A stretch of DNA of 64,000 bases, from assembly GCA_002269645.1 (NCBI GenBank), contig NIVC01003823.1, forward strand, positions 90,704-154,703, read 5' to 3'. Source of the DNA: Macrostomum lignano (lineage: Eukaryota). Of this stretch, positions 7,819-64,000 are shown piece by piece; positions within the stretch are counted from its first letter, which is position 1; each line of letters starts with the position of its first letter. The position numbers and the translations under genes are program-made. Below the pieces are notes generated by a model. The model was not told the origin of the DNA. It searched no databases and saw only the letters and a list, made by a program, of their open reading frames with translations.

Positions 7819-9539
7819 AGCAACCGACAGCTAGCAGACAGGCTGTCCAAATATGATGAAATCAAGCTCATGCAATAGAAATAAAAGTTTAGCTAGAGAA
7901 AGTTATATCTATTTGAACAATTAAAAAAGCAATGGCCGCATAAATTCGGCTTTTTTGTCAGACACAGGATGCATTATTCTTAACAACAATTGTTAAATGC
8001 ATAATTTAAGCTAACATTTGGCCAGTGGCCAGAAATCATGATATTTGTTATCATTATCAATCATATATACTAGAATACTAGAAAACCTAAAAATATAAAA
8101 TAGATTGAACATTGTAATCAATAAATGATGCATCCTTTAGCAATTAGCATAATTACTGCAATATACTATATGTATGCTATATTATAATAACTAAATATAT
8201 TTAGATTATTAGAGATAAATCATTTTAGCATAATAGATATAAAAGTATGTTTAATTTCAGGTTTTATCTAATCAATTCTATAAAATAGCATTTGGTATTA
8301 AAAGTTATTTCAAAGTTAAAACAAGTCTAACAAAGACTCTAAGTCATATAAAATATATCATAAATGATAGGCCTAACAACTAAAGTTATTTTTAATGAAT
8401 CTTAGGCAATTCTTATACTTAATCCTCAGATAAAGATTGAGGAATAGTATTATATCTCCTTATATCTTAATACTAAAAGTGGTGCGTTGTTTGTTTGTGT
8501 GTTGCAATTTTTCTCCTAGACTACTGGCAAGTCAGCGTTGAAACTTATATGGGAAAACTGCAAATTTTCCGGATTGGGTTTATAGCAATTTTAATCTTTC
8601 ATTTTTACATTTTAAGATCCCTAGAAAAGCAGAAAACTGTTTTTTTAACCCTCAATAACCTTCTTTGGCCACTCTGCCTGGGGCTGCAGCCAGTTTGTAA
8701 AAATAGCCACCCCAACCTCCGCCCGCGGGCCGCTGTGTATTGAGGGGTGGTGGGTGCGCATGTTCCGCGTTCAATGCAAATAACCCCCCCGCGTGTTGGG
8801 GGGTTCAATTAAATTTAACGATTCCCCCGGAATGGGAGGGGGTTGGGCTTGGGCTGAGTGTACATAGCAGTTGTACAGTGTAAGGAGATAGCTAGGACTG
8901 TGTCGAGATTTAATTGGTTTTATTATCGGCGGCATTCAATAGGCAGCCATGTGTATTTGCTGGGCAGTAAAATTTAATGAATAAACTTGCGAGCCTCTTT
9001 AGCAGGCTGTGAACGTACACTCGATACTTTAATGCTTTAAATCAGGAAATTTCAAGCGCTAACTGTTCCTCGAGTTTTAAACTTTCAGAAGAGAGACTTA
9101 TATTACTGGAAAGATCTTGCAATACTGAGTTCGGGGATATAAGTTGTTTGCTTTAAATGTGAAAACAAAAAGCACAGCATTTAAAAAACGATTTCCATAC
9201 TTTTAACTTTCGGCAGTGTACTCATTTTGGAGTTCAATGGGGGTTCGACCAACCCCCAAAAGTTGGTGGGAGGGGGGGTTCAACTTTTAATTGCCACTGC
9301 GTATTGGAAGGGGGTCAGTCGCTGTGTATTGGAGGGTTGATTTAGTTTGCGCAATCTTTTTGTTAACTTTTACCGAGACTGATACTGACTGACTGTGAAA
9401 TCGGTTGCGCATTCAATTAATTCAATTGGTTCAACACGCTGCTGCGTTGTAGCTCTAACCCTAACCCTAACCCTAACCACTAAATCCTGAGAGTTGATTC
9501 TTTTTTACGGAGAAAATTTCGATTCAGTCCAGTTTAATG

Positions 9540-9870
9540 GAGAGAATTTCTGTTTCGCGGAGACGATTTTGATGGATGTCAGTTTCACGGAGAGGATTTC
9601 CATGGAGTCCAGTTTCACGGAGAGGATTTCTGTTTCTCGGAGGGGATTTTGATGAATGTCAGTTTCACGGAGAGGATTTCCATGGAGTCCAGTTTCACGG
9701 AGAGGATTTCTGTTTCTCGGAGGGGATTTTGATGAATGTCAGTTTCACGGAGAGGATTTCCATGGAGTCCAGTTTCACGGAGAGGATTTCTATTTCTCGG
9801 AGGGGATTTTGATGAATGTCAGTTTCACGGAGAGGTGTTTGATGGAGTTCTCTTTTACGGAGAAGATTTC
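9540..9870. repeat. 80-bp tandem repeat built from ~20-bp GTTTCACGGAGAGGATTT subunits; a related tract lies at ~10960-11220
   Basis: Direct periodicity. Confidence 0.9.
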
Positions 9871-11229
9871 GATGATGTTCAGTTTCGCGGAGAGAAGTTG
9901 GATGATGGGATTCAGGGAATGGCATTTCAGGGAATGGAGTACCGGTGATGGGAATTCTTCCCCTTTCTCCTCCAGAGGAGGAGTTGGCCTCGTCCTTATA
10001 CTAAAACCGACGCGATGTTTGTCTGTCTGTATGTCTGTCTGTCTGTATGTAGCAAGTGAACTCCTACAATTCTGCCAAGTCAACGTCGAAACTTATATGG
10101 GAAAACTGCAAATTTTCCGGAGCAGGCTTTAGGCTATTTTAATTTTTAATTTTCACATTTTAACATCCCTAAAAAAGCAGAAAACTGCTTTTTTAACCCC
10201 AATAACCTTCTTTGGTCACTCTGCCTGGGGCTTCAGCCAGTTTGTAAAAATAGCCACCCCAACCTCCGCCCGCGGGCCGCTGTGTATTGAGGGGTGGTGG
10301 GTGCGCGTGTTCTGCGTTCAATGCAAATAAAACCCCCGCGTGTTGGGGGGTCGAGTTAAATTTAATGCTTCCCCCAGAACGGGGGTTGGGCTTGGGCTGA
10401 GTGTACATAGCAGTTGTACAGTGTAAATAGATAGACTGTGTCGAGATTCATTTGGTTTTATTATTGGCAGCCCTGTGTATTAGTTTGGCAGTGAAATTCA
10501 ATGAATAAACTTGCGAGCTTCTCTAGCAAGCAGTCGGGAAATTGGTAAATTTCAAACGCTAACTGTTCTCGAGTTTTAAACTTTGAGAGGAGAGACTTAT
10601 ATTGCTGGAAAGATCTTGCAACGCTGAGTTCGGGGATATAAGTTGTATGCTTTAAATATGAAAAGAAAAAGCACAGCATTTAAAAAACTATTTCCATACT
10701 TTTAACTTTCTGCAAAAATTGTACTCAGTTTTGCGAGACGTAATAGATAAAGTTGGGCGTATTGGAAGGGGGTCTGCCGCTGCGTATTGGAGGGTTGATT
10801 TAGATTGCGCAACCGTTTATTTAACTTTAAATAAGACTGATACTGTCTGACTGAGAAATGGTTTGCGCAATTAATTGATTCAATTAATTCAACACGCAGC
10901 TCTGTGCAGCTCTAACCCTAACCCTAACCAATGAATTCTGAGAGTTAAGTTCTTTTTGACAGAGAAAATTTCGATTGAGTCCAGTTTCACGGAGTATTCT
11001 GATGGTTTTCGGTTTCACGGAGAGGATTTCTTTTTCGTGGAGAGAATCTAGATGTATTTCTGTTTTACGGAGACGATTTTGATGGATGTCAGTTTCACTC
11101 AGAGGATTTCCATGGAGCCCAGTTTCACGGAGAGGATTTCTGTTTGGCGGATTGGATTTCGAAAGGAGTCCAGTTTCACGGAGAGGGTTTCTGTTTCATG
11201 GAGGGATTTTGATGGATTTGGTATCTTCA

Positions 11230-16190
<4,961 letters not shown>

Positions 16191-20900: not shown

Positions 20901-22200
20901 TCAACGTCTTTAAAGTACAACCACACAGCACTGCCTCTTCCTCGAGGTTGCTGGGTTGGCTTATCAACAGAGGCCATTGCAAATGAATGGCTGAAATTGT
21001 TTGATTTGTAAATTGTAAATTGTAATGTAATATTGTGTAATTGCCTATTTTAATTTGCTAGGTAGAAAAGCAAAGAAAAAACAAGTATTATATTATTTTA
21101 AATTAAAATATTTATTTATATTTTAAATAAAATATTGCATAGTATAGCAGTATAGTGTAAATGTAAAGTCACTACAGACTTTAAAGTCAAATAGGCTAGA
21201 AAAAAATATTTTTAGACTAACCATATAGATTAGAAATATACTACTATGCATCAGGCAATCAGGCATACATATTCAATATACCAGTGTACCACATGATAGT
21301 ACTAGTACATAATAGTTAATACTATATTGAATATTGAATATTATTCATTATTCAATTCAATTCAAGAAGAAAAAGTATTTAATATTTGTGTTTGACTATT
21401 ATTATTACTATTAACAAATGACAATAACAATAGCAAATAACAATTTAATTTAGCATATCCATCAAGTATATTTGCTACTTAGTACTTAGACTTAGTCAAC
21501 CTTAATTTTTAATTTACAGCAATTTATTTTAGTAAAAAAATACTATGCTTATATATTAAAAATTATTAGTTATAAATTATAATTACTAAATAACTATTAG
21601 ACAATCAGATTATAAAATTATGCTCTAGTATCTACTATCTATCTGTATAGTATCTAATCTATTTATACATTATTATAGCATAAAAATAATAAGAAGAAAG
21701 AAAAACTCAAATATGCAAATTCATGATCAAAATGAAATGAAATTTTTGTTTTAACTATTTATTTAATACTAAATTCTAAAATAGTAATAGTAGCAAATAC
21801 TACTTTTAAATTAAAAATTTAAAAATAAAAATACTAAATAGTTACAGCTTTCAGCTTAGTTTGAGCTTTGAGAAAGCCAAAAAGCAACACAAATGTCTAA
21901 GAAGTAAGAACTTCTTACTTCTCAGCCAGACTCTGAGTTCCTTCTCAACCAGAGAAGAAAGCCAGATGGGCAGATGCAGATGGTATAAGCTGATGGTATA
22001 GAAGCACTTAAAAATAGAATCAAACACATTAACTGATAGAAAAATTCAAATTTGAAGAAAAAAAAACAAAATTTGAACGGAAATTTTTTACTTTTAATTT
22101 TTCACGAACCAATCACGATCACGATCACGATCACGGCAAAGCTGAAATTATTCACGACTACTCACGCCCGACCCAAAAATTTTTGCTCGTCCGACCTCTA
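17987..22200 (-). mobile_element. Autonomous-looking hAT DNA transposon (4214 bp)
   Basis: 8-bp TSD CTTTATTC (17979-17986, 22201-22208); TIRs TAGGGGTAGGACG / TAGAGGTCGGACG; clustered TCACGA subterminal motifs at both ends. Confidence 0.95.
18892..20977 (-). CDS. hAT transposase, BED finger + DDE + hATC dimerisation domain (641 aa; exons 20977-19467, 19306-18892)
   Basis: SAVWLYF..CLAC..HIESCH BED finger; TCDLWS, RDGASNM, CAAH, DTRWNST, SVPSERIFS motifs; phase-2 GT-AG intron joins the ORFs in frame. Confidence 0.92.
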
Positions 22201-24962: not shown

Positions 24963-40453
<15,491 letters not shown>

Positions 40454-45532: not shown

Positions 45533-46120
45533 GGGGCCGTAGCACAGTGGTCCAGCGCGGCGCTTTGATGTGCCAGCGGCCCAGGCTCGTGTAAGAGCTG
45601 AGAAATTAGAGTCAAAATTCACGAAGTATATTATTTGGCATGCACGATAACTATAGGGAGCGATTATATTGTCAGTGATAGAAAGGTAATAAAATGACTC
45701 ACCCAACTGGGGTGGAGGGCATGCACAGAGTAAATCAAGATGCAAGTAATAAGAGAGCAGCCCCCACCCCAAATGCACAAATCAAACGCAACCTCACACT
45801 CGATTCCAAGTGCAGTCACATTAATTTGGGGCTGAATTGGAATCTCGGCTTGGCTCTGCTCGTGCAATTAACGCCCTTGAGGGCCAACCCCAAGGCACAG
45901 TGAAGTGTACATGCCTAACGATAAATAAAGTTAGGGCCGCTGTACACTCCTGTGTAAGTGTGTGCCTGTGCGTATGACTGCGTACGTATCCGCGCGCTTG
46001 TGTGCCTGCTCAGGGGAGTCGGCGGAATGGGCAGCAATGCCTCTCGCCGGTTGTGTGCCAATGTCGCTTAAAATGCGCCAGGTTGCACACAGCCCCCCTG
46101 CCCTACTGTCTCTAATAAAT
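45533..46120 (+). mobile_element. SINE family 1 split by a solo LTR
   Basis: Head 45533-45589 and body 45799-46120 join into a canonical copy. Confidence 0.88.
45590..45798. mobile_element. 209-bp solo LTR (Gypsy-like)
   Basis: TGTAAG...CTCACA termini, 4-bp TSD CTCG (45586-45589, 45799-45802). Confidence 0.75.
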
Positions 46121-47447: not shown

Positions 47448-49442
47448 ATGGCCAACCCTAGCGCGGTTCTCGCTGACATCAGCGACTTCGACAGAGACAA
47501 GATGAACCACGTCAAAGTCACGGAGAAATTGGTTCTACCCAACAGTGAGCAGCTCAAGTCTGAACGAAAAGAGACTCAACTACGCTCCGAAATTGAGCAG
47601 GGCCTCCAGCTGAATCATGTCGCCAAGGTGGAGGAGAAAGTCGTCCTGCCAGATGCCAGCGTCATCGCCCAGGAGAAACAGGAGCACGAGCTGCACGAGG
47701 GCATCAAGGGAAGGCCGAAATTAAATCACGTCGACGTAGAGGTGCGGAACAGCCTGCCGGGTGCGGAGGCGATTGCCCAGGAGAAACAGGAGCACGAGCT
47801 GCACGAGGGCATCAAGAGAAGGCCGAAATTAAATCACGTCGACGTAGAGGTGCGGAACAGCCTGCCGGGTGCGGAGGCGATTGCCCAGGAGAAACAGGTG
47901 AGCAACCGCTTAGAGTTCCAGTTCGTGCCAGTTGGTCTAAATTGAGTCATCACGCGGCTGATGCAAATAAAAAGCAACCGAAAAAGAAGCAGCTTATTCT
48001 CTGTCGAATCGCACAATTGGACCGCGTATCACTCCTAGTCGTCTGTTAGAGTAGCTTGGTAGATGTTTTGGTTGGCAATATAAGATCCCCATCCTTAGGT
48101 ACATGCATGTAAAGCCTAAATCTAATCCATCATCTCCGCACCGCACGCAGGAGTTGCAGCTGCGAACTTACTTACTTACTACTGACGGGGGGCGCAGGCG
48201 CCGCGAATAGGCCGCGAGGCCCCTATCGCAACCCCAAGGTAAAAGAGCACAAGGATTAGCCTTGGGGGTGCGCCCAGTCCCCGCCAGTAGTCGGCAGGTC
48301 CGCAGTGGAGGCATCGGCGACCCTCATCCGGCCGGAGTCCCGGACGAAGGCGCGGAGGTCTCGGATATTGTCCGCGGTGGTCAGCTCGTCCATCCGCTGG
48401 GGGTGGCCGAGGTATTTGTGCCGCGCCTTGTTGAAGTAAGGGCAGAAGGTGACGTGATGCTCCGCGGTCTCCTCTCCTATGCCACAGAAGGGGCAGGTGG
48501 GAGGGCAACCGGTTTGCAACGATATATGTCTCTGGAAGAATCCGTGGCCGGTTAGGACCATGCACATCTCCCTGAGGTCGGTTCTGTTAAGCGAAATCAG
48601 ATAATCAGAGACTTTCCTGTTCAGGTTAGGCATGGCAGAGCGGCTCTGCCTGTACTCGGTGCAGCTGTTCCAGTGGAGCTGGTGCTGCTGATGGAGCCAC
48701 CTGTTGATATGGCGGGTGACTTGCGACCTGGGAGTGGGTAGCCTCATCAGACGGTGGTTGCCGTCTGGGTTGCTGCCCTCCTTGGCGAGAGAGTCTGCGA
48801 GCTCGTTGCCCAGGATGTTGCTGTGACCAGGTGTCCAGATAATTCTAATCCTGTTAAGGACTGAGAGAGATTGCACACTGCGGTGGCATTGAGATACTGT
48901 AGCAGCGGAGATATTCTCAGTGGTTAAGGCCTTAATAGCAGCTTGGCTATCAGTGTAGAAATTAATGTCAAAATTATTAATGTTCGCCTGAAACAGTTGC
49001 TGGGCACACTGCTCGATGGCGCAAATTTCAGCTTGGAAAACTGAGGTGTTCTCACCGAGGTGCAGACTTTCCTGGAGAAGCATCTTACCCTCGTGGAAAA
49101 TGGCAATACCCGCTCCAGCGCGGCCGTTGAACAGCGAGCCGTCGGTGAAGCAGTGAATGCCCTGGCTGCGCCGGTTCACACCGACATCCAGCGGAATGTT
49201 GTCTCAGCTGACTGTCTCAGTTTACGCAGCTGCGAAGCGAAATTGAGAAAGTACACAAGCTGAACCCTGTAGACACGAAGGTGCGCATCAGCATGCCAGA
49301 CGCTGGAGACATCCTCCAGGAGCGTCGAGAGCAGCAACTGCGCGAGGAGATTACGAAGGGCGCGCCGCTGCGCCGCGTTGAAACGAAAGTCCGCGACAGT
49401 CTGCCCGACGCTGAGACGATCGCGGCCGAGAAGGCGTGCTGA
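47448..49442 (+). CDS. Six-repeat beta-thymosin/WH2 actin-binding protein (ciboulot/tetrathymosin-like). Exon 1 47448-47897; exon 2 48151-49442 interrupted by a LINE at 48167-49225
   Basis: Repeated LxxxI...L[NR][HPR]V.T/V.(EK/R)..LP...I.QEK units; donor CAG|GTGAGC, acceptor CGCAG|GAG; frame resumes ..QLR|[16 protein letters not shown]. Confidence 0.85.
48167..49225 (-). mobile_element. 5'-truncated non-LTR retrotransposon (I-group, LOA/R1/Tad1-like)
   Basis: 11-bp TSD GCAGCTGCGAA (48156-48166, 49226-49236); (TAAG)n 3' tail; RNase H ORF. Confidence 0.92.
48256..49203 (-). pseudogene. Truncated LINE ORF2 C-terminus: RNase HI domain + CCHC-like zinc knuckle
   Basis: FTDGS, FQAE, YTDSQAA, WTPGH..GNELAD..AK motifs; [14 protein letters not shown]; no stop in 316 codons. 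Confidence 0.9.
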
Positions 49443-51666: not shown

Positions 51667-52385
51667 AGTATATGTGGTGTACTAAATTATACAATTAGCA
51701 GGAAAAATACATGCTGATTAAATTTTTCTCCAATTTTTAAATGACACAATTTACGCACATGTAAATCGGCTGAGCTATCAGTACGGGAAAAATAGGCAAT
51801 AGCAGGACGTTACTGTAGAAAGACCAGAAATCGTACTCAACACTAAGCAGGTTCTCATCCTTCAGTGCTTTTTCACTTTAGTAGTAACATAAAATTCGCA
51901 GTGTACTGTCATATACAGAAGAAGAAAAATGGTGAGACGTGCAAAGGCTCCAAACCAAAGCTTCAACAGTCAGTGCATGCAAGTATTAAATTGAGATGAG
52001 ATGTACATTCTTAAAAATAGTTCAAACTGTACACTCGTGATAATGATGGCGTAAAACCTTCCCTTACTTTGGTCCCTAAACAGAATACGAACTCAATGAC
52101 ACACTAAGACGTCACTTTCTTCGGCTCAAAATCAATGAATATTGATCTGTGGCCAAGAAATGTTTTAGAACTTTACCAATGTAGAATCTTTACTATAGCA
52201 GTCTGTTTCTCGCTAGGAGTTGCTATTTTTGCCAAAGAAATAATTTGTCAAAAATTATATATTGAGAGAGGTATAAATAAAAGTGTACTTTTATCTGGCT
52301 TACAGGCAGTTTATCCTCTAGATAGGTGCAAGCTAAAAATAATTTATATAGAAAGCATCATGTTTACAAAAAACACTGATTTGGG

Positions 52386-55300
52386 TCAACAGGAACAGCC
52401 GCCGGAGGCCTGTGGCTGCTGTTGGCCTCCGCTGCTGAGGGCGATGCCGTCCGGTCCGGCAGCCTCCCAGAGCCCAGGCGTCTGGATGATCTTCTCCACC
52501 AGCTCCTCGAAGGCGGTCTTAACGCCCTCGTTGGTCTTGGCGCTGGCCTCGATGAACAGCATGTGATGCCTGCGTGCAAACCGAAGGCCCTCGTCTCGGG
52601 TCACCTCGCGATCGGTCTGAGAGGTGTACAGGTGAGTTATGTGCTGACATAAACTCGACATTTAACACTAGTTGAAGATCACGCCATCCCAGTGTCATGT
52701 CTAGCTGGGAATCGTGTCATCCCAGTGTCATGTCTAGCTGGGGATCATGTCATCCCAGTGTCATGTCTAGCTGGGGATCATGTCATCCCAGTGTCATGTC
52801 TAGCTGGGGATCATGTCCTCTCAGTGTCATGTCTAGTTGAAGATCATGTCATCCTACTGTCATGTCTAGCTGGGGATCATGTCATCCCAGTGTCATGTCT
52901 AGCTGGGGATCATGTCATCCCAGTGTCATGTCTAGCTGGGGATCACGTTATACCAGTCTTCTTGTTAAAGTGATTTTAGTGACAAATAGTTTGCTATAAA
53001 ATTGAAGTGCTTACGCAGTCAATCTTATTGCCAACCAGCATCTTGACAAGATTATTTCTATTGGCAAAAGTGGCTAACTCATTGAGCCAGTTCTCCAATC
53101 GCATAAATGTGTCCTTTTTGGCCACATCGTACACCAGAATGACGCCCTGAGCATTGCGATAATAGCTGGGAGTTAAAGTGCGAAATCGCTCCTGACCTGC
53201 CGTGTCCTGTGGTAGAAAAAATATGGTGTCAACATTCAATAACAATGGAAATAAACCAAAAAATAATTTTTACAAAGTGTAAAAACGTGAAAACCTCACC
53301 CAGATGGCTAATTTTGCCTTGTTCCCATCAACAGTGATAGTCTTCACTTTGAAGTCAACACCTGAAATTTGATGTTAGATTGTACACTAGCAATCTACGC
53401 CCCCCGTTGGGGAGCCAAAGAAATGCAATACACGTTTTTTTAATAAGCTACATGTATCCTTGAAATCTTAAAAAATCTCCTATCAAACCTTGTAAGCCTT
53501 GACATGTCAGTAATTCCCCCCACAAGCTTTAACATATCAACTTCCCCCCTTGACATCTCAGCCATGCCCCCAATAAGCCTTGGAAATCTAAAAATATCTG
53601 TCAACCTTCTAACCCTAACCCTAACCTAACCCTAAAGCATTGAAATTTCAGTAATTCTCTCTAAGAGTCATTATAGCACTACTACAGCATTATAGCGATT
53701 CCCTGCAAGCCTCGACATCGTAGGGATTCCCAAATGAATATCTTAACTTCGACATGAAGCTTCTTTTAATCAGCGATCCCTCCCCTGAGGAGGCATCAAA
53801 TAATGTAATAAAAAGTTTTCAATAAACTACATGTAGCTTCTGACTTTAGCCTTGAAATCTCATTTATACCCCCGTGAGCCTTGACATCTCAGCTATTCCC
53901 CCGTAAGCCTTAACATGTCAGCGATGGCGCCCATAAACCTTGAAATCTGAAAAATCCCCTGCTAACCTTGAAACTCGATAAAATATAACCCTCAACCCAC
54001 ACCTGACCTAAACCTAACTTTAACCCAACATAAAGCCTTGAAATCTCAGCAATTCTTCTCCCCTAAGCCTTGACATTTTAGTGATTCCTTCTTTAAGAAT
54101 CACAGCACTATAACGATTTCCACCTAGCTTTGACATCGTAGCAATTCCCAAATGAATCTTTTAACTTCGACATGACTTTTCTTTTATGTATACATAGTGC
54201 TACTTTTATTTTTTACATGACTCTTCTTCTATCAGCGCCTCCCGTGGCGAGCCAACAAAGAATGCAATAAAAAAAATTGAGTAAAGTACATGAACTTTGA
54301 ATTAGCTTCTGACTTTTGCTTTGACATCTCAGAAACCCCCCCCCGTAATCTCAGTTATTCTCTGAGAGCCTTGACGTCTCAGTTTTTCTCCCCAGCACAG
54401 CATTATAGCTGCATTTAATTTTCCATGACACCTTTCATGTCTGACATGACGCTTCTTTTATTCTACTATGATGCTTCTTAATTTTTTAAATGACACTTTC
54501 ATTAGTTTTTAAATGACGCTTCTATGATTTTTTCATGACGATTCTATGATTTTTTACATGACGCTTCTATGATTTTTAGATGACGCTTCGATGATTGTTT
54601 ACATGACGCTTATATGATTTTTAACATGACGCTTCTATGATTTTTAAAATGACGCTTCTATGATTGTTTACATGACGCTTCTATGATTTTTTACATGACG
54701 CTTCTATGATTTTTTACATGACGCTTCTATGATTGTTTACATGACGCTTCTATGATTGTTTACATGACGCTTCTATGATTGTTTACATGACGCTTCTATG
54801 ATTTTTTAAATGACGCTTCTATGATTTTTATATTACGCTTTTACGATTTTTTACATGACGCTTCTATGATTGTTTACACGATGCTTCTATGATTTTTACA
54901 TGGCGCTTCTATGATTGTTTACATGGCGCTTCTATGATTGTTTATATGACGCTTCTATGATTTTTTAAATGACGCTTCTACGATTTTTTACATGACGCTT
55001 TTATGATGTTTTAGATGACGCTTCTATGATTTTTTACATGACGCTTCTATGATTTTTTACATGACGCTTCTATGATTGTTTACACGATGCTTCTATGATT
55101 TTTTACATGACGCTTCTATGATTTTTTACATGACGCTTCTATGATTTTTACATGACGCTTCTATGATTTTTTAAATGACGTTTTTTGATTTTTATATGAC
55201 GCCTCTATGATTTTTTAAATGACGCTTCTATGATTTTTATATTACGCTCTTACGATTTTTTACATGACGCTTCTATGATTGTTTACACGATGCTTCTATG

Positions 55301-58300
55301 ATTTTTTACATGACTCTTCTATGATTTTTACATGACGCTTCCATGATTGTTTACATGACGCTTCTATGATTTTTTACATGACGCTTCTATGATTGTTTAC
55401 ATGACGCTTCTATGATTGTTTACATGACGCTTCTATGATTTTTTAAATGACGCTTCTATGATTGTTTACATGACGCTTCTATGATTTTTTACATGACGCT
55501 TCTATGATTGTTTACATGACGCTTCTATGATTGTTTACATGACGCTTCTATGATTTTTTAAATGACGCTTCTATGATTTTTATATGACGCTTCTATGATT
55601 GTTTACATGACGCTTCTATGATTGTTTACATGGCGCTTCTATGATTGTTTACATGACGCTTCTATGATTGTTTATATGACGCTTCTATGATTGTTTACAT
55701 GACGCTTCTATGATTGTTTACATGGCGCTTCTATGATTGTTTACATGACGCTTCTATGATTTTTTAAATGACGCTTCTATGATTTTTATATTACGCTCTT
55801 ACGATTTTTTACATGACGCTTCTATGATTGTTTACACGATGCTTCTATGATTTTTACATGGCGCTTCTATGATTGTTTACATGGCGCTTCTATGATTGTT
55901 TATATGACGCTTCTATGATTTTTTAAATGACGCTTCTATGATTGTTTACATGACGCTTCTATGATTGTTTACATGACGCTTCTATGATTTTTTAAATGAC
56001 GCTTCTATGATTTTTATATGACGCTTCTATGATTGTTTACATGACGCTTCTATGATTGTTTACATGGCGCTTCTATGATTTTTTACATGACGCTTCTATG
56101 ATTGTTTATATGACGCTTCTATGATTTTTTAAATGACGCTTCTACGATTTTTTACATGACGCTTTTATGATGTTTTAGATGACGCTTCTATGATTTTTTA
56201 CATGACGCTTCTATGATTTTTTACATGAAGCTTCTATGATTGTTTACATGACGCTTCTATGATTGTTTGCATGACGCTTCTATAATTTTTTACATGACGC
56301 TTCCATGATTGTTTACATGACGCTTCTATGATTTTTTACATGACGCTTCTATGATTGTTTACATGACGCTTCTATGATTGTTTACATGACGCTTCTATGA
56401 TTTTTTAAATGACGCTTCTATGATTTTTATATGACGCTTCTATGATTTTTTACATGACGCTTTTATGATGTTTTAGATGACGCTTCTATGATTTTTTACA
56501 TGACGCTTCTATGATTTTTACATGACGCTTCTATGATTGTTTACACGATGCTTCTATGATTTTTTACATGACGCTTCTATGATTTTTTACATGACGCTTC
56601 TATGATTTTTACATGACGCTTCTATGATTTTTACATGACGCTTCTATGATTGTTTACATGACGCTTCTATGATTGTTTATATGACGCTTCTATGATTTTT
56701 TACATGACGCTTCTATGATTTTTTACATGACGCTTCTATGATTGTTTACACGATGCTTCTATGATTTTTTACATGACGCTTCTATGATTTTTTACATGAC
56801 GCTTCTTTGATTTTTTACATGACGCTTCTATGATTATTTCATGACGCTTCTACGATTTCTGCAGGACGCTTTAATGATTTTTACATGACACCTCTATGAT
56901 TTTTACATGACGCTTCTATGATTGTTTACATGACGCTTCTATGATTGTTTACATGACGCTTCTATGCTTTTTACATGACGCTTCTATGATTTTTACATGA
57001 CGCTTCTATGATTTTTTATATGACGCTTCTATGATTGTTTATATGACGCTTCTATGCTTTTTACATGACGCTTCTATGATTTTTTACATTACTCTTCTAT
57101 GATTGTTTACATGACGCTTCCATGATTGTTTACATGACGCTTCTATGATTTTTTACATGACGCTTCTATGATTGTTTACATGACGCTTCTATGATTGTTT
57201 ACATGACGCTTCTATGATTGTTTACATGACGCTTCTATGATTTTTTAAATGACGTTTTTTGATTTTTATATGACGCCTCTATGATTTTTTAAATGACGCT
57301 TCTATGATTTTTATATACGCTCTTACGATTTTTTACATGACGCTTCTATGATTGTTTACACGATGCTTCTATGATTTTTTACATGACTCTTCTATGATTT
57401 TTACATGACGCTTTAATGATTTTTTCATGACGCTTCTACGATTTTTTACATGAAGCTTCTATGATTGTTTACATGACGCTTCTATGATTGTTTACATGAC
57501 GCTTCTATGATTGTTTACATGACGCTTCTATGATTTTTTACATGACACTTCTATGCTTTTTTACATGATGCTTCCACGATTTTTACATGACACTTCTACG
57601 ATTTTTTACATGACGCTTCTATGATTTCTTACATGACGCTTCCATGATTGTTTACATGACGCTTCTATGATTGTTTACATGACGCTTCTATGATTGTTTA
57701 CATGACGCTTCTATGATTTTTTAAATGACGCTTCTATGATTTTTATATGACGCTTCTACGATTTTTTACATGACTCTTTTATGATTTTTTACATGACGCT
57801 TCTCTGATTGTTTACATGACGCTTCTATGATTGTTTACACGACGCTTCTATATTTTTTACATGACGCTTCTATGCTTTTTACATGATGCTTCACGATTTT
57901 TTACATGACACTTCTACGATTTTTTACATGACGCTTCTATGATTTCTTACATGACGCTTCCATGATTGTTTACATGACGCTTCTATGATTGTTTACATGA
58001 CGCTTCTATGATTTTTTAAATGACGCTTCTATGATTTTTTAAATGACGCTTCTATGATTTTTATATGACGCTTCTACGATTTTTTACATGACTCTTTTAT
58101 GATTTTTTACATGACGCTTTTCTGATTGTTTACATGACGCTTCTATGATTGTTTACACGACGCTTCTATTATTTTTTACATGACGCTTCTATGATTTTTA
58201 CATGACTCTTCTATGATTGTTTACATGACGCTTCTATGATTGTTTACATGAAGCTTCTATGATTGTTTACATGACGCTTCTATGATTGTTTACATGACGC

Positions 58301-61300
58301 TTCTATGATTGTTTACATGACGCTTCTATGATTTTTTAAATGACGCTTCTATGATTTTTATATGACGCTTCTATGATTTTTACATGACGCTTTATGATGT
58401 TTTAGATGACGCTTCTATGATTTTTTACATGACGCTTCTATGATTTTTACATGACGCTTCTATGATTGTTTACACGATGCTTCTATGATTTTTTACATGA
58501 CGCTTCTATGATTTTTTACATGACGCTTCTATGATTTTTACATGACGCTTCTATGATTTTTACATGACGCTTCTATGATTGTTTACATGACGCTTCTATG
58601 ATTGTTTATATGACGCTTCTATGATTTTTTACATGACGCTTCTATGATTTTTTACATGACGCTTCTATGATTGTTTACACGATGCTTCTATGATTTTTTA
58701 CATGACGCTTCTATGATTTTTTACATGACGCTTCTTGATTTTTACATGACGCTTCTATGATTATTTCATGACGCTTCTACGATTTCTGCAGGACGCTTTA
58801 ATGATTTTTACATGACACCTCTATGATTTTTACATGACGCTTCTATGATTGTTTACATGACGCTTCTATGATTGTTTACATGACGCTTCTATGCTTTTTA
58901 CATGACGCTTCTATGATTTTTTACATGACGCTACTATGATTTTTACATTACGCTTCTATGATTGTTTACATGACGCTTCCATGATTGTTTACATGACGCT
59001 TCTATGATTTTTTACATGACGCTTCTATGATTTTTTACATGACGCTTCTATGATTGTTTACATGACGCTTCTATGATTGTTTACATGACGCTTCTATGAT
59101 TTTTTAAATGACGTTTTTTTATTTTTATATGACGCCTCTATGATTTTTAATGACGCTTCTTTGATTTTTATATTACGCTCTTACGATTTTTTACATGACG
59201 CTTCTATGATTGTTTACACGATGCTTCTATGATTTTTTACATGACGCTTCTATGATTTTTTACATGACGCTTCTATGATTTTTACATGACGCTTCTATGA
59301 TTTTTACATGACGCTTCTATGATTGTTTACATGACGCTTCTATGATTGTTTATATGACGCTTCTATGATTTTTTACATGACGCTTCTATGATTTTTTACA
59401 TGACGCTTCTATGATTGTTTACACGATGCTTCTATGATTTTTACATGACGCTTCTATGATTTTTACATGACGCTTCTTGATTTTTTACATGACGCTTCTA
59501 TGATTTTTCATGACGCTTCTATGATTTTGCATGACGCTTCTAATGATTTTTACATGACGCTTCTATGATTTTTACATGACGCTTCTATGATTGTTTACAT
59601 GACGCTTCTATGATTGTTTACATGACGCTTCTATGCTTTTTACATGACGCTTCTATGATTTTTACATGACGCTTCTATGATTGTTTACATGACGCTTCTA
59701 TGATTGTTTATATGACGCTTCTATGATTTTTACATGACGCTTCTATGATTTTTTACATGACGCTTCTATGATTGTTTACATGACGCTTCTATGATTGTTT
59801 ACATGACGCTTCTATGATTTTTACATGACGCTTCTATGATTGTTTACATGACGCTTCTATGATTGTTTACATGACGCTTCTATGATTGTTTACATGACGC
59901 TTCTATGATTTTTAAATGACGTTTTTTGATTTTTATATGACGCTCTATGATTTTTAATGACGCTTCTATGATTTTTATATGACGCTTCTTATGATTTTTA
60001 CATGACGCTTCTATGATTGTTTACACGATGCTTCTATGATTTTTACATGACTCTTCTATGATTTTTACATGACGCTTTAATGATTTTTTCATGACGCTTC
60101 TACGATTTTTACATGACGCTTCTATGATTTTTACATGACGCTTCTATGATTGTTTACATGACGCTTCTATGATTGTTTACATGACGCTTCTATGATTTTT
60201 TACATGACGCTTCTATGATTTTTTACATGACGCTTCTACGATTTTTTACATGACACTTCTACGATTTTTTACATGACGCTTCTATGATTTCTTACATGAC
60301 GCTTCCATGATTGTTTACATGACGCTTCTATGATTGTTTACATGACGCTTCTATGATTGTTTACATGACGCTTCTATGATTTTTAATGACGCTTCTATGA
60401 TTTTTATATGACGCTTCTACGATTTTTTACATGACTCTTTTATGATTTTTTACATGACGCTTCTCTGATTGTTTACATGACGCTTCTATGATTGTTTACA
60501 CGACGCTTCTATTATTTTTTACATGACGCTTCTATGCTTTTTACATGATGCTTCTACGATTTTTTACATGACGCTTCTATGATTTCTTACATGACGCTTC
60601 TATGATTGTTTACATGACGCTTCCATGATTGTTTACATGACGCTTCTATGATTGTTTACATGACGCTTCTATGATTTTTAATGACGCTTCTATGATTTTT
60701 AAATGACGCTTCTATGATTTTTATATGACGCTTCTACGATTTTTTACATGACTCTTTATGATTTTTTACATGACGCTTTCTGATTGTTTACATGACGCTT
60801 CTATGATTGTTTACACGACGCTTCTATGATTTTTACATGACGCTTCTATGATTTTTACATTACGCTTCTATGATTGTTTACATGACGCTTCTATGATTGT
60901 TTACATGACGCTTCTATGATTGTTTACATGACGCTTCTATGATTGTTTACATGACGCTTCTATGATTGTTTACATGACGCTTCTATGATTTTTAATGACG
61001 CTTCTATGATTTTTATATGACGCTTCTATGATTTTTACATGACGCTTTATGATTTTTAGATGACGCTTCTATGATTTTTACATGACGCTTCTATGATTTT
61101 TACATGACGCTTCTATGATTGTTTACACGATGCTTCTATGATTTTTTACATGACGCTTCTATGATTTTTTACATGACGCTTCTATGATTTTTACATGACG
61201 CTTCTATGATTTTTACATGACGCTTCTATGATTGTTTACATGACGCTTCTATGATTGTTTATATGACGCTTCTATGATTTTTTACATGACGCTTCTATGA

Positions 61301-62810
61301 TTTTTTACATGACGCTTCTATGATTGTTTACACGATGCTTCTATGATTTTTACATGACGCTTCTATGATTTTTTACATGACGCTTCTTGATTTTTTACAT
61401 GACGCTTCTATGATTATTTCATGACGCTTCTATGATTTTGCATGACGCTTCTAATGATTTTTACATGACGCTCTATGATTTTTACATGACGCTTCTATGA
61501 TTTTTACATGACGCTTCTATGATTGTTTACATGACGCTTCTATGATTGTTTACATGACGCTTCTATGATTTTTACATGACGCTTCTATGATTTTTACATG
61601 ACGCTTCTATGATTGTTTACATGACGCTTCTATGATTGTTTACATGACGCTTCTATGATTTTTTACATGACGCTTCTATGATTTTTTACATGACGCTTCT
61701 ATGATTTTTACATGACGCTTCTATGATTGTTTACATGACGCTTCTATGATTTTTACATGACGCTTCTATGATTTTTATATGATGCCTCTATGATTTTTTA
61801 AATGACGCTTCTATGATTTTTATATGACGCTTTACGATTTTTTACATGACGCTTCTACGATTTTTTACATGACGCTTCTATGATTTTTACATGACTCTTC
61901 TATGATTTTTACATGACGCTTCTATGATTTTTACATGACGCTTCTATGATTTTTTACATGACGCTTCTATGATTTTTACATGACGCTTCTATGATTGTTT
62001 ACATGACGATTTTTTACATGACGCTTCTATGACGATTTTTTACATGACGCTTCTATGATTTTTTTTACATGACGCTTTTTATGATTTTTTTAGTTTTTTT
62101 GGCGTTAAAAAGCTTTAATTAAAAAAACTCTACTCTCTAAAAATTCGAACCATCGTTTCTGCATTTAGCAGTTCAGTCTGTTTACCTCTAGGCTAGCTCT
62201 CATCGTTTTGATAACATGAATTCAGCACTTATAATTATAAGTTTCAAAACTCCAAGCATAGAGTAAATCACACGAGGCAGTTATTACATAATCAATTTCT
62301 CAGTCAGTCAGTATCAGTTAACAATATTGTTGCGCAATCTAAATCAAGTCTGCAGTGCTACGCTTCCACACTGCATTTTCAATACTGTGACGCAATTCAA
62401 GTCGGAGTTACAATTCAGTTATGATGTAATCTATTTCAGAATCAGAATTCAACCAGTCAGTTTTTTCTCTAGCATTCTTACAATGCATTTCAAGTCGAAA
62501 AGTTTGCTTGACCTTTGCAAAAAAGCATGTTTTTCGAATATTTAATTGCTTTAACATGGAGCAATTTCTTAGCCAAGATGCATGTACCGTCCCAGGAAAA
62601 TTTCTGATCGAACAGTGCAAGTTCGAAGAAAATCGGTCCAGCCATTTTTTCTCTAATCGATTGCGTACAAACAAACAACTCATTTTAGTATATAGGATTT
62701 AGGAGTATACAATATAATGTATAATCGATAGCTATGTTAATATTTAACACTTACCAATAGTGGCAGGCTGATCATTGTCAAATGTATTGTCCACAAATCT
62801 TAGGAGCAGG
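52386..62810 (-). CDS. RAB18: Rab18 GTPase, 5'-partial. Exons 62810-62755, 53361-53300, 53206-53015, 52616-52386; first coding exon beyond the window end
   Basis: [19 protein letters not shown]|VDFKVK..KLAIW|[54 protein letters not shown] (CXC prenylation). Confidence 0.93.
52680..52950. repeat. 33-bp minisatellite (AGTGTCATGTCTAGCTGGGGATCATGTCATCCC)
   Basis: Direct periodicity. Confidence 0.93.
53387..62697 (-). mobile_element. 9.3-kb Helitron-like non-autonomous element with a central tandem repeat
   Basis: 5' A|TCCTATATACTAAAA..TTGTTTGTTTGTACGC head; 3' GCTCCCCAACGGGGGGC hairpin + CTAG|T; shares blocks with the 8465 family. Confidence 0.65.
54480..62090. repeat. ~7.6-kb 21-22-bp minisatellite (ATGACGCTTCTATGATTGTTTAC / ..TTTTTTAC)
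   Basis: Direct periodicity; roughly 340-350 units with higher-order structure. Confidence 0.97.
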
Positions 62811-63119
62811 CTAAAAATTTAAACATGATTTGTACATGAATAAGACATGAATATTTTATATGCATGTATACATGGCCTAAACCCATGGATGTCAAAACAA
62901 TCTATGGTATCTAAATCTGTTTTCTGTTTCAACTTTATGCAAAAAATTAATGTCTAAATCTCCATCTTCAACTCTGCATATTAGATAGATCTACTGTGTG
63001 GCTTGTGGGCTTATGACTAGATAACTAGTCAAAGTTTCATGTACTTTATGCTTGTACTATATACCATAGTCTAGATCATGTTGGGTGCATGTCTGAAAAA
63101 TTGAACAATTATGAATGCA

Positions 63120-63285
63120 TATGTAACAGGGTTGACTTCAATCCCACCACTGCCACTAAGTTGTAACAGGGTTGACTTCAATCCCACCACTGCCACCAAG
63201 TTGTAACAGGGTTGACTTCAATCCCACCACTGCCACCAAGTTGTAACAGGGTTGACTTTAATCTTACCACTGAGCCACCAAGTTG
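63120..63285. repeat. 40-bp tandem repeat x~4 (GTTGTAACAGGGTTGACTTCAATCCCACCACTGCCACCAA)
   Basis: Direct periodicity. Confidence 0.9.
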
Positions 63286-64000
63286 TATCAGGGGTTTCTT
63301 CCTACTTTCTATTGATCTTAGTATGATTCTGGTAGTGCTCTTAATATACTTTTAGTAGTGTCTTCAGCATAAGTCTAGCCAGTGTCTCTGTATAAGTCTA
63401 GTAGCATCTATGTACTTTTGGCCTAAGCAGTCTTATTGGTATATAAACTATATTTTAGTCTAAGCATTACTGAGATTAGAGTCATAATGTTTGACTCTTC
63501 AAACATTAAGAGTCAAACACTCATCTACTTACTCATCATGTTTGACTCATCTACTTAATTGTTGTTAAGTGAGCAACCCTACCCAATTTCATAATGTTTG
63601 CTCTTAGCACTCACTTTGTATGTATTCCCAATTCCCTTAGTGAGTTTTTCAAAACACTTCTTAGGATCTCTTATCAATTCCTATTCATTCCTATTCATTC
63701 CTAGAATCTAGGAATGAATTTAATTGAACAAGTTCAATATTTAAGCTTAAGCTTTATGTATAAATAGGTTGCTTTTTCTCCCCTAACTTGGCTCCATGTA
63801 TAGTAAAATTTTGGATATAGTTAAAACAAAAATAGAATATTTAAAATATTTTATGTAGTAAACAAATATTAATGTTTTTGCATAAGTCTTAAAGCTAATA
63901 TTTCTAAGAAATAAAGTACCACTTCTATAGGTCCCTAGACATTTTGGTGACAGCCTTTTTTGGTGACAATTTTGGATGTTTGGGTGACAAATTTAGACAA

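What the first reader, a model, noticed from the sequence alone, without database searches (positions are those of the whole stretch)
53387..62697. A single Helitron-like element inflates an ~82-nt RAB18 intron to 9.4 kb
Seen: the intron spans 53362-62754. On the - strand an element starts A|TCCTATATACTAAAA.. at 62697 and ends hairpin + CTAG|T at 53387, leaving only 57 + 25 nt of intron outside it. It contains a 7.6-kb minisatellite. Known: Helitrons have 5' TC, a 3' hairpin + CTRR, insert between A and T without a TSD, and non-autonomous forms can carry central tandem repeats. Inference: Helitron-borne arrays may be a main vehicle of intron and genome expansion here.
Basis: partly seen in the sequence, partly recalled or inferred. 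Interest (0 to 1): 0.7.

Follow-up and report, generated by a model that had tools for sequence, protein, structure and literature searches.

The report
Helitron-like repeat element fills RAB18 intron
One non-coding, Helitron-type mobile element carrying a 7.6-kb array of a 23-base repeat makes up 99% of a RAB18 intron that would otherwise be about 82 bases long; this kind of element is already known from other animals, so it is a well-supported but ordinary case.

Summary
RAB18 intron 2 (minus strand, 62754..53362, 9,393 nt) holds a 9,311-nt block (62697..53387). The block contains a 334-copy, 23-bp minisatellite, and 57 + 25 nt of intron lie outside it.

The Helitron reading survives testing inside the window.
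- **3' end:** A 17-nt GC hairpin, 8 nt and CTAG|T recur on the minus strand at 37220. Similarity stops exactly at CTAG|T in both copies.
- **5' end:** TCCTATATACTAAAA..GTTGTTTGTTTGT has relatives at 8463, 9993 and 11857, and similarity starts at the TC.
- **Other element types:** There are no terminal inverted repeats, no target-site duplication, no tRNA and no ribozyme.

Each relative carries a different array between a related head and a hairpin tail.

Untested or open points:
- No empty site, autonomous partner or source genome was reachable in any collection.
- The 5' junction is uncertain by about 7 nt.
- The array may have grown after insertion. The 23-mer occurs 1-3 times at two homologous places in the tail and 334 times at the third.
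- Half of the window's array DNA lies in this family, but at least 15 other arrays show no link to it.

Verdict: a new member of a known kind. Interest is moderate to low.

The parts
62755..62812 (-). RAB18 exon 2 (..[20 protein letters not shown]), followed by the donor GTAAGT
   Evidence: tblastn; sequence
62698..62754 (-). 57 nt of intron 2 upstream of the element, holding the 5' splice site. It ends ..TGTATACTCCTAAA. The last 7 nt (TCCTAAA, 62704..62698) may instead belong to the element.
53387..62697 (-). Whole Helitron-like non-autonomous element, 9,311 nt, in the same orientation as RAB18
62078..62697 (-). Head (left terminal region), 620 nt, with no coding capacity detected. It has three blocks collinear with relatives A and B: nt 1-31, AAATTTTCCTGG (62603..62592), and TTGATTTAGATTGCGCAAC..ACTGATACTGACTGACTGAGAAAT (62347..62295).
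   Evidence: Pfam and homologue searches empty
62667..62697 (-). 5' terminus TCCTATATACTAAAATGAG plus the GTYT microsatellite seed GTTGTTTGTTTGT. The same place reads TGTCTGTCTG.. in B/C and (GTCT)213 in X.
54444..62090 (-). 23-bp minisatellite (element strand AAAAAATCATAGAAGCGTCATGT), about 334 copies. Three spacer variants are interspersed, and there are multi-kb internal block duplications.
   Evidence: TRF
54232..54443 (-). Tail unit U1, a short version of the unit. It ends in a weak hairpin plus CTGA|T.
53770..54231 (-). Tail unit U2. It starts with 2-3 degenerate 23-mers, has 29-bp sub-repeats, and ends in the hairpin CCTCC-TCAGG-GGAGG plus GATCG plus CTGA|T.
53387..53769 (-). Tail unit U3. 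It starts with one 23-mer-like segment, contains (TTAGGG)-like repeats at 53636..53608, and ends with the true 3' terminus.
53387..53440 (-). Right terminal sequence: the hairpin GCTCCCC-AAC-GGGGGGC (53415..53399), the spacer GTAGATTG, and CTAG (53390..53387), followed by a flanking T
53362..53386 (-). 25 nt of intron 2 downstream of the element (TGTACAATCTAACATCAAATTTCAG), holding a branch-site-like TCTAAC and the acceptor
53300..53361 (-). RAB18 exon 3 ([20 protein letters not shown])
37220..40205 (-). Relative X, in an intron of the + strand Na/Ca-exchanger gene. It has the same right terminal sequence (..GCCCCGAAGGGGGGCACTAGATTGCTAG|T, ending at 37220), an 18-bp x 56 array (37439-38438), a B-like internal head (38439-39330) and (GTCT)213 (39331-40184). 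Its 5' end is not resolved.
8463..12058 (+). Relatives A (8463-9992), B (9993-11856) and the start of C (11857-12058+), arranged head to tail. They have a related 5' terminus, their own 80-bp and GA-rich arrays, and the hairpin CTCCTCC-AGA-GGAGGAG plus TTGGCCTCG directly before the next TCC.

Best explanation
The block is a non-autonomous rolling-circle transposon with canonical Helitron (HLE1-type) ends. It sits in the sense orientation in RAB18 intron 2, at or within 7 nt of ..CTCCTAAA|TGTACAATC... Its layout is a head, an array and a tail. The head is a 620-nt left terminal region beginning TC, with a GTYT microsatellite seed about 20 nt in. The array is 334 copies of a 23-mer. The tail is three diverged copies (61-69% identity) of a 210-460-nt unit. 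Each unit ends in a GC hairpin plus CTRR, and the last unit supplies the real 3' end (17-nt hairpin, 8 nt, CTAG).

Inferred mechanism, not shown here: a RepHel protein encoded elsewhere nicked at the 5' TC and peeled off one strand. It terminated at the hairpin/CTAG signal and integrated the strand between a host A and T without a target duplication. The insertion left the donor with 57 nt and the branch site and acceptor with 25 nt intact, so the gene still splices.

The 23-mer is homologous to the first ~23 nt of each tail unit. It occurs about once before U3, 2-3 times before U2, and 334 times before U1. The array therefore grew from an element-internal seed, by slippage and then by unequal exchange of multi-kb blocks. 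I cannot tell whether most of that growth happened before or after this insertion, and I put it at roughly even odds.
For: 3' end: Two independent structural scans pick it out. The first scan also found a second site at 37220 (minus strand) whose last 37-50 nt align with ours (81%; z = 7.4, 0 of 1000 shuffles). That site shares TAGATTGCTAG, and similarity stops at CTAG|T in both copies. A 20-nt pattern gives 2 hits against 0.03 expected. A search seeded with X alone finds ours at E = 0.069, ending exactly at 53387.

Hairpin: It is predicted in all five family ends, and 2 of 6 pairs show compensatory changes. The geometry is a 17-nt palindrome ending 12 nt from the element's end. This matches the published '16-20 nt palindrome about 11 bp from the 3' end', 5' TC, 3' CTRR and A|T (PMC4067079, PMC11417382).

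5' end: An unbiased BLAST of the head against the window hit A and B at E = 5e-6. The first 31 nt align with the first 31-36 nt of A (0 of 1000 shuffles) and B (6 of 1000). Flanks upstream of the TC are unrelated in B. The gapped chain score of ours against A is 81, against a shuffle maximum of 61.

Pairing of the two ends: X combines our right terminal sequence with a B-like head (chain score 55 against a shuffle maximum of 51, 0 of 200; 16 of 17 nt block).

Exclusions: no TIR (p = 0.97) and no TSD (p = 0.65), also with flanks included. No tRNA or Rfam family was found.

Context: The neighbouring intron 3 is 92 nt, so an ancestral intron of about 82 nt is plausible.
Against: No empty site, allele, orthologue or further genome sequence could be reached. 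Insertion between A and T is therefore read only from the flanking bases.

The 5' junction is ambiguous. TCCTAAA immediately upstream repeats the terminal TCCTATA, and relative A shares CTCCT(T)A(T)A upstream of its TC.

A profile built from A and B alone does not recover our head at E < 10, so head homology rests on short collinear blocks.

A and B end in CTCG, not CTRR. Their 3' end is only weakly alignable with ours (z = 2.6).

X has no recognisable TCCT..ACTAAAA terminus.

No RepHel gene lies in the window; the longest ORF is a 504-aa hAT-like protein. The left-flank microsatellite plus central repeats plus 3' stem-loop is also the architecture of Helentron-derived HINEs (PMC7492417).
Confidence: 0.72

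Rival explanations
1. It is a Helentron-associated non-autonomous element (HINE / DINE-1-like, HLE2) rather than a canonical Helitron. It would still move by a rolling circle, but its partner would be an endonuclease-bearing Helentron that targets T-rich sites.
For: The modular plan matches HINEs: a short GTYT/GTCT microsatellite in the left flank, a variable spacer, central tandem repeats, and a 3' palindrome. This is the plan described for Cg_HINE and DINE-1 (PMC7492417 section 7; PMC4067079). If the first T is assigned to the host, both flanks would be T.
Against: There are no 11-16-nt terminal or subterminal inverted repeats in ours, A or B. There are no runs of T at either junction. The end is hairpin plus CTAG|T in two copies, which is the HLE1 signature.
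Confidence: 0.12
2. It is a composite rather than one element. A head-family element and an unrelated tail-family element (or a local ~420-bp satellite) would have landed separately in the intron, and a minisatellite then expanded between them.
For: In this window the exact head and the exact tail co-occur only here. A and B carry a different 3' end, and X lacks the 5' terminal motif. The tail is itself a tandem triplication.
Against: A 5'-type end and a 3'-type end lie in the same orientation at the two extremes, with nothing but the array between them. No internal hairpin plus CTRR closes the head, and no TC-type start opens the tail units, which begin TA and TT after CTGA. The array monomer is homologous to the start of the tail units. 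A, B and X show the same head/array/hairpin-tail order, and X links a B-like head to our right terminal sequence.
Confidence: 0.11
3. There is no mobile element. An ancestrally long intron would have accumulated a minisatellite in place, and the TC/CTAG ends would be coincidence.
For: TC and CTRR alone are common, and structure-based Helitron finders have high false-positive rates (PMC11417382). Tandem repeats make up 31% of the window irrespective of this family.
Against: Both ends have homologues elsewhere in the window whose similarity starts or stops at the proposed boundaries. The full 3' structure is expected only 0.25 times per 128 kb.
Confidence: 0.04

Closest known systems
[quoted passage not shown]
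   Same: They are canonical-type Helitrons that carry an internal minisatellite. Many copies are fixed inside introns, and the array is remodelled after insertion.
   Different: Here the monomer is 23 bp and unrelated in sequence, and a single copy holds 334 units (7.6 kb). The tail carries three successive terminator-like ends. No link to 10-bp periodic DNA was examined.
HINEs: DINE-1 of Drosophila, HINE-Mo of mites, Cg_HINE of the Pacific oyster (PMC4067079; PMC7492417)
   Same: The plan is the same: a left flank with a short GTCY-type microsatellite, central tandem repeats that differ between subfamilies, and a right flank with a stem-loop. They are non-coding, frequent in genes, and arrays can reach about half of the element or more.
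   Different: HINEs have 11-15-nt subterminal inverted repeats and T-rich (TT) junctions. This family has neither, and it ends in hairpin plus CTAG|T. Oyster arrays are 2-29 monomers of about 165 bp, not hundreds of 23-mers.
DINE-TR1 and other transposon-seeded satellites (Dias et al. 2015, as tabulated in PMC9659126)
   Same: Central tandem repeats of a rolling-circle element expand into long arrays.
   Different: Those expansions are mainly heterochromatic satellite blocks. This one is a single intronic copy.
Head-to-tail Helitron concatemers and Helitron-like tandem arrays (plants, as cited in PMC11934779; Hydractinia HSymSHlR with a 372-bp internal unit)
   Same: Relatives A, B and C lie head to tail, with a hairpin end abutting the next TC. 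The triplicated tail unit of about 420 bp resembles internal unit repetition.
   Different: The arrangement here is three copies in a gene-rich window, not megabase subtelomeric arrays. The A/B junction reads CTCG|TC rather than CTRR|TC.

Membership tests
Canonical Helitron (HLE1), non-autonomous | 5' terminus begins with TC | tested here: met
   The element strand starts TCCTATATAC at 62697. Relatives start TCTTAATAC (8463) and TCCTTATAC (9993, 11857), and alignment begins at the TC. Caveat: an alternative start 7 nt upstream (TCCTAAA, 62704) also begins with TC.
Canonical Helitron (HLE1), non-autonomous | 3' terminus CTRR | tested here: met
   CTAG at 53390..53387, and CTAG again in relative X at 37223..37220. 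Similarity ends there in both. The internal pseudo-ends U1 and U2 read CTGA. A and B read CTCG, which does not fit.
Canonical Helitron (HLE1), non-autonomous | 16-20-nt palindrome about 11 bp from the 3' end | tested here: met
   GCTCCCC-AAC-GGGGGGC is 17 nt and ends 12 nt from the element end (8-nt spacer plus CTAG). A hairpin is predicted in all five family ends, and 2 of 6 pairs show compensatory changes. Definition from PMC4067079.
Canonical Helitron (HLE1), non-autonomous | Insertion between host A and T with no target-site duplication | tested here: inconclusive
   The flanks are A (62698) and T (53386). X is followed by T and A is preceded by A. No TSD was found. No empty site could be obtained from any collection, and the 5' junction is uncertain by 7 nt.
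Canonical Helitron (HLE1), non-autonomous | No terminal inverted repeats | tested here: met
   The best inverted match of the first 80 nt against the last 150 nt is 7 nt of A/T (p = 0.97). With flanks included, and for A and B, scores are no better than shuffles.
Canonical Helitron (HLE1), non-autonomous | Dispersed copies sharing both termini in unrelated flanks | tested here: inconclusive
   Each terminus has independent copies in the window: the 3' end twice, and the 5' end in three independent versions. X couples our 3' end to a B-like head. However, no second copy shows both of our exact termini, and only 64 kb could be searched.
Canonical Helitron (HLE1), non-autonomous | An autonomous partner encoding Rep/helicase with the same termini | not testable with these tools
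   No long ORF or Helitron-type domain lies in the window. The source genome is not in any searchable collection.
Helentron/Helitron2-derived non-autonomous element (HLE2, HINE, DINE-1-like) | 11-16-nt terminal or subterminal inverted repeats | tested here: not met
   Criteria from PMC4067079, PMC7492417 and PMC11417382.
Helentron/Helitron2-derived non-autonomous element (HLE2, HINE, DINE-1-like) | Insertion in TT or T-rich sequence, with T runs at both junctions | tested here: not met
   The junctions read ..CTAAA|TCC and CTAG|TGTAC. X reads CTAG|TCCC. There are no T runs.
Helentron/Helitron2-derived non-autonomous element (HLE2, HINE, DINE-1-like) | Left-flank microsatellite, central tandem repeats, 3' palindrome | tested here: met
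   The seed is GTTGTTTGTTTGT here, TGTCTGTCTG in B/C and (GTCT)213 in X. Arrays are unrelated between copies, and all have a 3' hairpin. This is a resemblance in layout, and it does not decide membership.
SINE or other retroposon | tRNA/7SL/5S-derived head, A-rich or simple-repeat tail, flanking target-site duplication | tested here: not met
   No tRNA, no Rfam match and no TSD. The true tRNA-derived SINE of this genome is a different ~370-bp family.
Retrozyme / hammerhead-ribozyme tandem repeat | Hammerhead ribozyme motif in each unit | tested here: not met
   An Rfam scan of 52000-64000 at E <= 1 gave no match.

The most novel reading that the evidence does not exclude
This little-sampled animal lineage (its nearest named relative in the databases is the flatworm Macrostomum lignano) may host a Helitron family with canonical Helitron ends and a HINE-like modular body. 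Two built-in seeds, a GTYT microsatellite next to the 5' end and a 23-mer at the start of the tail unit, would expand to kilobases after insertion. Each insertion would then act as a nucleation site for arrays, and the family would be a principal cause of the ~30% tandem-repeat content and of 100-fold intron inflation.
Probability: 0.2. Interest if true: 0.55.

Novelty: new member of a known kind. Interest (0 to 1): 0.33.

Why it matters
It is a clean, base-resolved example of how a housekeeping gene's roughly 80-90-nt intron can become 9.4 kb through one rolling-circle element and its internal repeat, without touching the splice signals. Three or four relatives lie within 64 kb, and each carries a different array. 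This suggests that in this repeat-rich genome the family seeds arrays rather than merely ferrying them. That idea is testable genome-wide and bears on how intron and genome size grow. Helitron- and Helentron-carried tandem repeats in introns are already documented in nematodes, flies, mites and oysters, so the case adds a lineage and a variant, not a new principle.

Tried and rejected
1. Finding other copies through spurious ORFs: the 91-aa head ORF has no homologue among 5.8 billion proteins and no Pfam family.
2. Finding the source genome or alleles: exact look-ups of two window ORFs found nothing on record. RAB18 and Na/Ca-exchanger searches gave at best 85% and 46% identity to Macrostomum lignano entries, so the species is not in the collections.
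3. DNA scans of public collections:
 - The 23-mer gave 0 hits in the metagenome and viral sets.
 - The right-terminus pattern gave 2 metagenome hits, followed by A and lacking the C-run arm, at about chance level.
 - The left-terminus pattern gave 1 hit in a bacterial MAG, against about 0.75 expected by chance, and none in viral contigs.
4. tRNA or SINE origin of the head: its GGTTCGAAT motif looked tRNA-like, but ARAGORN and Rfam found nothing.
5. A possible 16-nt degenerate TSD (TGTATACTCCTAAATC / TGTACAATCTAACATC) and a 14-nt inverted repeat between the two intron remnants: neither is better than shuffles.
6. The ~370-bp dispersed repeat next to several arrays: it is a tRNA-derived SINE, unrelated to this family.
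7. Profile (nhmmer) searches for more left or right termini near the other arrays found none.
8. The 3' end of relative C and the 5' end of X could not be located.
Full report
**1. The observation**

RAB18 lies on the minus strand. tblastn with human RAB18 and direct reading place exon 2 at 62812..62755 (..PATIG|GTAAGT) and exon 3 at 53361..53300 (TTTCAG|[21 protein letters not shown]). Two further exons lie at about 53207..53018 and 52613..52395, and the protein ends GGCSC. Intron 2 is 62754..53362, which is 9,393 nt.

On the minus strand the block begins A|TCCTATATACTAAAATGAG at 62697 and ends ..GCTCCCCAACGGGGGGCGTAGATTGCTAG|T at 53387. It leaves 57 and 25 nt of intron outside it. TRF reports a 23-bp array at 54444..62090 with 334 copies and 90% matches.

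**2. Anatomy on the element strand**

- **Head, 62697..62078 (620 nt).** It is unique sequence with no Pfam family and no protein homologue.
- **Array, 62090..54444.** The monomer is AAAAAATCATAGAAGCGTCATGT. Three spacer variants are interspersed. Long internal self-matches reach 91-92% at offsets of about 2.0 and 2.6 kb, which indicates growth by block duplication.
- **Tail, 54443..53387.** It consists of three diverged copies of one unit (61-69% identity): U1 54443..54232, U2 54231..53770 and U3 53769..53387. Each unit has 29-bp sub-repeats, a T-rich stretch, ATTGCATT, a GC hairpin and then CTGA|T (U1, U2) or CTAG|T (U3).
- **Origin of the 23-mer.** Each unit begins with sequence homologous to the 23-mer. 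This seed occurs about once before U3 (TTAAAAGAAGCTTCATGTCGAAG), 2-3 times before U2, and 334 times before U1. The minisatellite is therefore an expansion of an element-internal seed at one of three homologous positions.

**3. Is the 3' end a real terminus?**

Yes.

- A scan for a perfect GC-rich hairpin followed within 13 nt by CTRR and T gave three hits in 128 kb. One was U2, and one was a new site on the minus strand ending at 37220.
- That site reads ..TTGCTTCTTGGCCGCCCCGAAGGGGGGCACTAGATTGCTAG|TCCCAA. Ours reads ..TTGCATTTCTTTGGCTCCCCAACGGGGGGCGTAGATTGCTAG|TGTACA. The two share the arm, the loop position and an identical TAGATTGCTAG, and they diverge immediately after CTAG.
- Statistics support the match:
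  - BLAST gives 81% identity over 37 nt.
  - A global alignment has z = 7.4, with 0 of 1000 shuffles as good.
  - A 20-nt pattern gives 2 hits against 0.03 expected.
  - An nhmmer search seeded with X alone finds ours at E = 0.069, ending exactly at 53387.
- A stricter structural scan (stem of at least 6 bp) finds only our site, against a background of 0.25.
- The hairpin is 17 nt and ends 12 nt from the element's end. It is predicted in all five family ends, with some compensatory changes.

**4. Is the 5' end a real terminus?**

Yes, to within about 7 nt.

- An unbiased BLAST of the head against the window hit 9337-9401 and 10795-10859 at E = 5e-6. Reading upstream of those hits revealed three related starts on the plus strand:
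  - 8463: ..CCTTATA|TCTTAATACTAAAAGTGGTGCGTTGTTTGTTTGTGTGTTGCAAT
  - 9993 and 11857: ..GGAGTTGGCCTCG|TCCTTATACTAAAACCGACGCGATGTTTGTCTGTCTGT..
- Our TCCTATATACTAAAATGAGTTGTTTGTTTGTACGCAAT aligns from its first bases. Smith-Waterman scores beat all 1000 shuffles for A and all but 6 of 1000 for B. Two further collinear blocks follow, and the chain score is 81 against a shuffle maximum of 61.
- There are two caveats. A profile built from A and B alone does not recover our head. TCCTAAA just upstream repeats the terminal heptamer and A shows the same pattern, so the true start could be 62704.

**5. Do the head and the tail belong together?**

Relatives A (8463-9992) and B (9993-11856) have the same order of parts. 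They have a head, a short telomere-like motif, their own array (80-bp units and GA-rich repeats) and a tail ending in the hairpin CTCCTCC-AGA-GGAGGAG plus TTGGCCTCG. The next TCC follows directly. Their 3' end is only weakly alignable with ours (z = 2.6).

Relative X supplies the link. It carries our right terminus, an unrelated 18-bp x 56 array, and an internal region homologous to the B head. The chain score is 55 against a shuffle maximum of 51 (0 of 200), and it includes a 16 of 17 nt block. X also carries (GTCT)213 where A, B and ours have GTTTGT/GTCTGT seeds.

The head family and the tail family therefore co-occur.

**6. What it is not**

- It has no terminal or subterminal inverted repeats (p = 0.97). 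The result holds with flanks included, and for A and B.
- It has no target-site duplication (p = 0.65).
- It contains no tRNA gene and no Rfam family, hammerhead ribozymes included.
- The ~370-bp repeat next to several other arrays is a tRNA-derived SINE unrelated to this family.

**7. Classification**

Published definitions are as follows.

- Canonical Helitrons (HLE1) have a 5' TC, a 3' CTRR, a 16-20-nt palindrome about 11 bp from the 3' end, insertion between A and T, and no TSD.
- HLE2 elements (Helentron, Helitron2 and their HINE derivatives) have 11-16-nt (sub)terminal inverted repeats and T|T or T-rich targets.

Our element meets every HLE1 feature that can be read from one copy, and it fails the HLE2 inverted-repeat and T-run tests.

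Its body plan resembles that of HINEs such as DINE-1 and Cg_HINE: a left-flank microsatellite of GTCY type, a variable spacer, central tandem repeats and a 3' stem-loop. I therefore file it as a Helitron-like (HLE1-type) non-autonomous element with a HINE-like layout. HLE2 stays as the main rival.

Membership cannot be completed. No empty site and no RepHel partner could be examined.

**8. How it most likely works**

The ends, the family and the seed-to-array relation are shown. The following steps are inferred from established Helitron biology.

- A RepHel protein supplied in trans nicked at the 5' TC and displaced one strand.
- It recognised the hairpin/CTAG as the stop signal.
- It inserted the strand at a host A|T in the intron.

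The triple hairpin-CTRR tail fits either terminator read-through with acquisition of new ends or simple tandem duplication.

The residual 57 + 25 nt keep the donor, a TCTAAC branch-like site and the acceptor. The neighbouring intron 3 is 92 nt. An ancestral intron of about 82 nt (or 75 nt) is therefore credible.

**9. Was the array carried or grown in place?**

Arrays differ completely among family members, and seeds are present in low copy at homologous sites. Both observations argue that arrays arise within copies. Whether this one expanded before or after landing in RAB18 cannot be told from one locus.

**10. The wider inference**

Tandem repeats cover 19,966 bp, or 31% of the window. Of these, 7,749 bp lie in this element, 1,000-1,854 bp in X, 1,030 bp in A plus B, and perhaps 2,025 bp in the region after C.

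At least 15 other arrays show no left or right terminus of this family in profile searches. They include the 33-bp array that makes up 281 of the 404 nt of RAB18 intron 4. 'A main vehicle' is plausible for this family but is not shown for the arrays in general.

**11. Novelty**

Helitron-borne minisatellites in introns are known from C. elegans. Helentron-borne central repeats are known from flies, mites and oysters. Satellite birth from them and head-to-tail Helitron arrays are also documented.

This case is a new member in an unsampled lineage. It is notable for the size of one array and for its mixed set of features.

Noticed in passing
window 8463-12058 (+), continuing to about 16230: Three relatives of the element lie head to tail: A 8463-9992, B 9993-11856, and C from 11857. 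A 7-bp-stem hairpin plus TTGGCCTCG directly abuts the next TCCTTATAC. The B/C junction is a 97.5% copy of the A/B junction. GA-rich arrays follow, including a 1.5-kb segment duplicated at 96.7% identity (12337-13850 and 14071-15619). The 3' end of C was not found.
   Followed up: partly
window 37220-40205 (-): Relative X fills most of the 3' part of an intron of the + strand Na/Ca-exchanger gene, whose next exon starts about 40212 after ..ATTCCAG. X contains (GTCT)213 and an 18-bp x 56 array. Only about 27 nt separate the microsatellite from the exon, so the acceptor has no obvious pyrimidine tract.
   Followed up: partly
window 53608-53636, 9453-9484, 10910-10932, 29453-29470: Short interstitial telomere-like runs, (TTAGGG)3-4, sit inside family members. 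They read TTAGGG on the element strand in our tail unit U3 (with a degenerate copy in U2). They read CCCTAA on the element strand in A and B, just before their arrays. The opposite orientation is unexplained.
   Followed up: no
window 6253-6619 (+), 31646-32014 (-), 26387-26699 (+), 45799-46102 (-), 2094-2277: A ~370-bp tRNA-derived SINE family has five copies (77-96% identity). The copy at 31646-32014 interrupts a 30-bp minisatellite (31191-31644 and 32008-32538), so that array predates the SINE insertion.
   Followed up: partly
window 52614-53017 (-) and 63122-63293: Other RAB18 introns also hold minisatellites. Intron 4 is 404 nt, of which 281 nt are a 33-bp x 8.5 array. Intron 1 holds a 40-bp x 4.2 array. 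Intron 3 has none and is 92 nt. No terminus of the Helitron-like family flanks these arrays.
   Followed up: partly
whole window: Tandem repeats make up 31% of the 64 kb, in 38 arrays. The source species is absent from all the collections. The nearest named proteins are Macrostomum lignano entries (RAB18 85%, Na/Ca-exchanger fragment 46%), which suggests an unsampled lineage, possibly a flatworm.
   Followed up: partly
window 19463-20977 (-) and 48256-49179 (-): Other mobile-element ORFs are present. One is a 504-aa hAT-like protein with a BED zinc finger and a Hermes DNA-binding domain. The other is a 307-aa ORF with an RNase H / RT-like domain.
   Followed up: no
window 62704-62717 and 53373-53386: The two intron remnants next to the element form an imperfect 14-nt inverted repeat (TTATATTGTATACT / AGTGTACAATCTAA, 12 of 14). 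It is not better than shuffles (232 of 1000), so it is probably chance.
   Followed up: yes
window 24963-40420 (+), 43235-43666 (+), 47448-47945 (+): Neighbouring genes were identified. There is a Na/Ca exchanger with Na_Ca_ex and Calx-beta domains, whose introns are packed with arrays. There is a TMEM231 exon. There is also a multi-repeat thymosin-beta gene, whose 108-bp TRF 'array' (47667-47898) is coding repeat, not a minisatellite.
   Followed up: no
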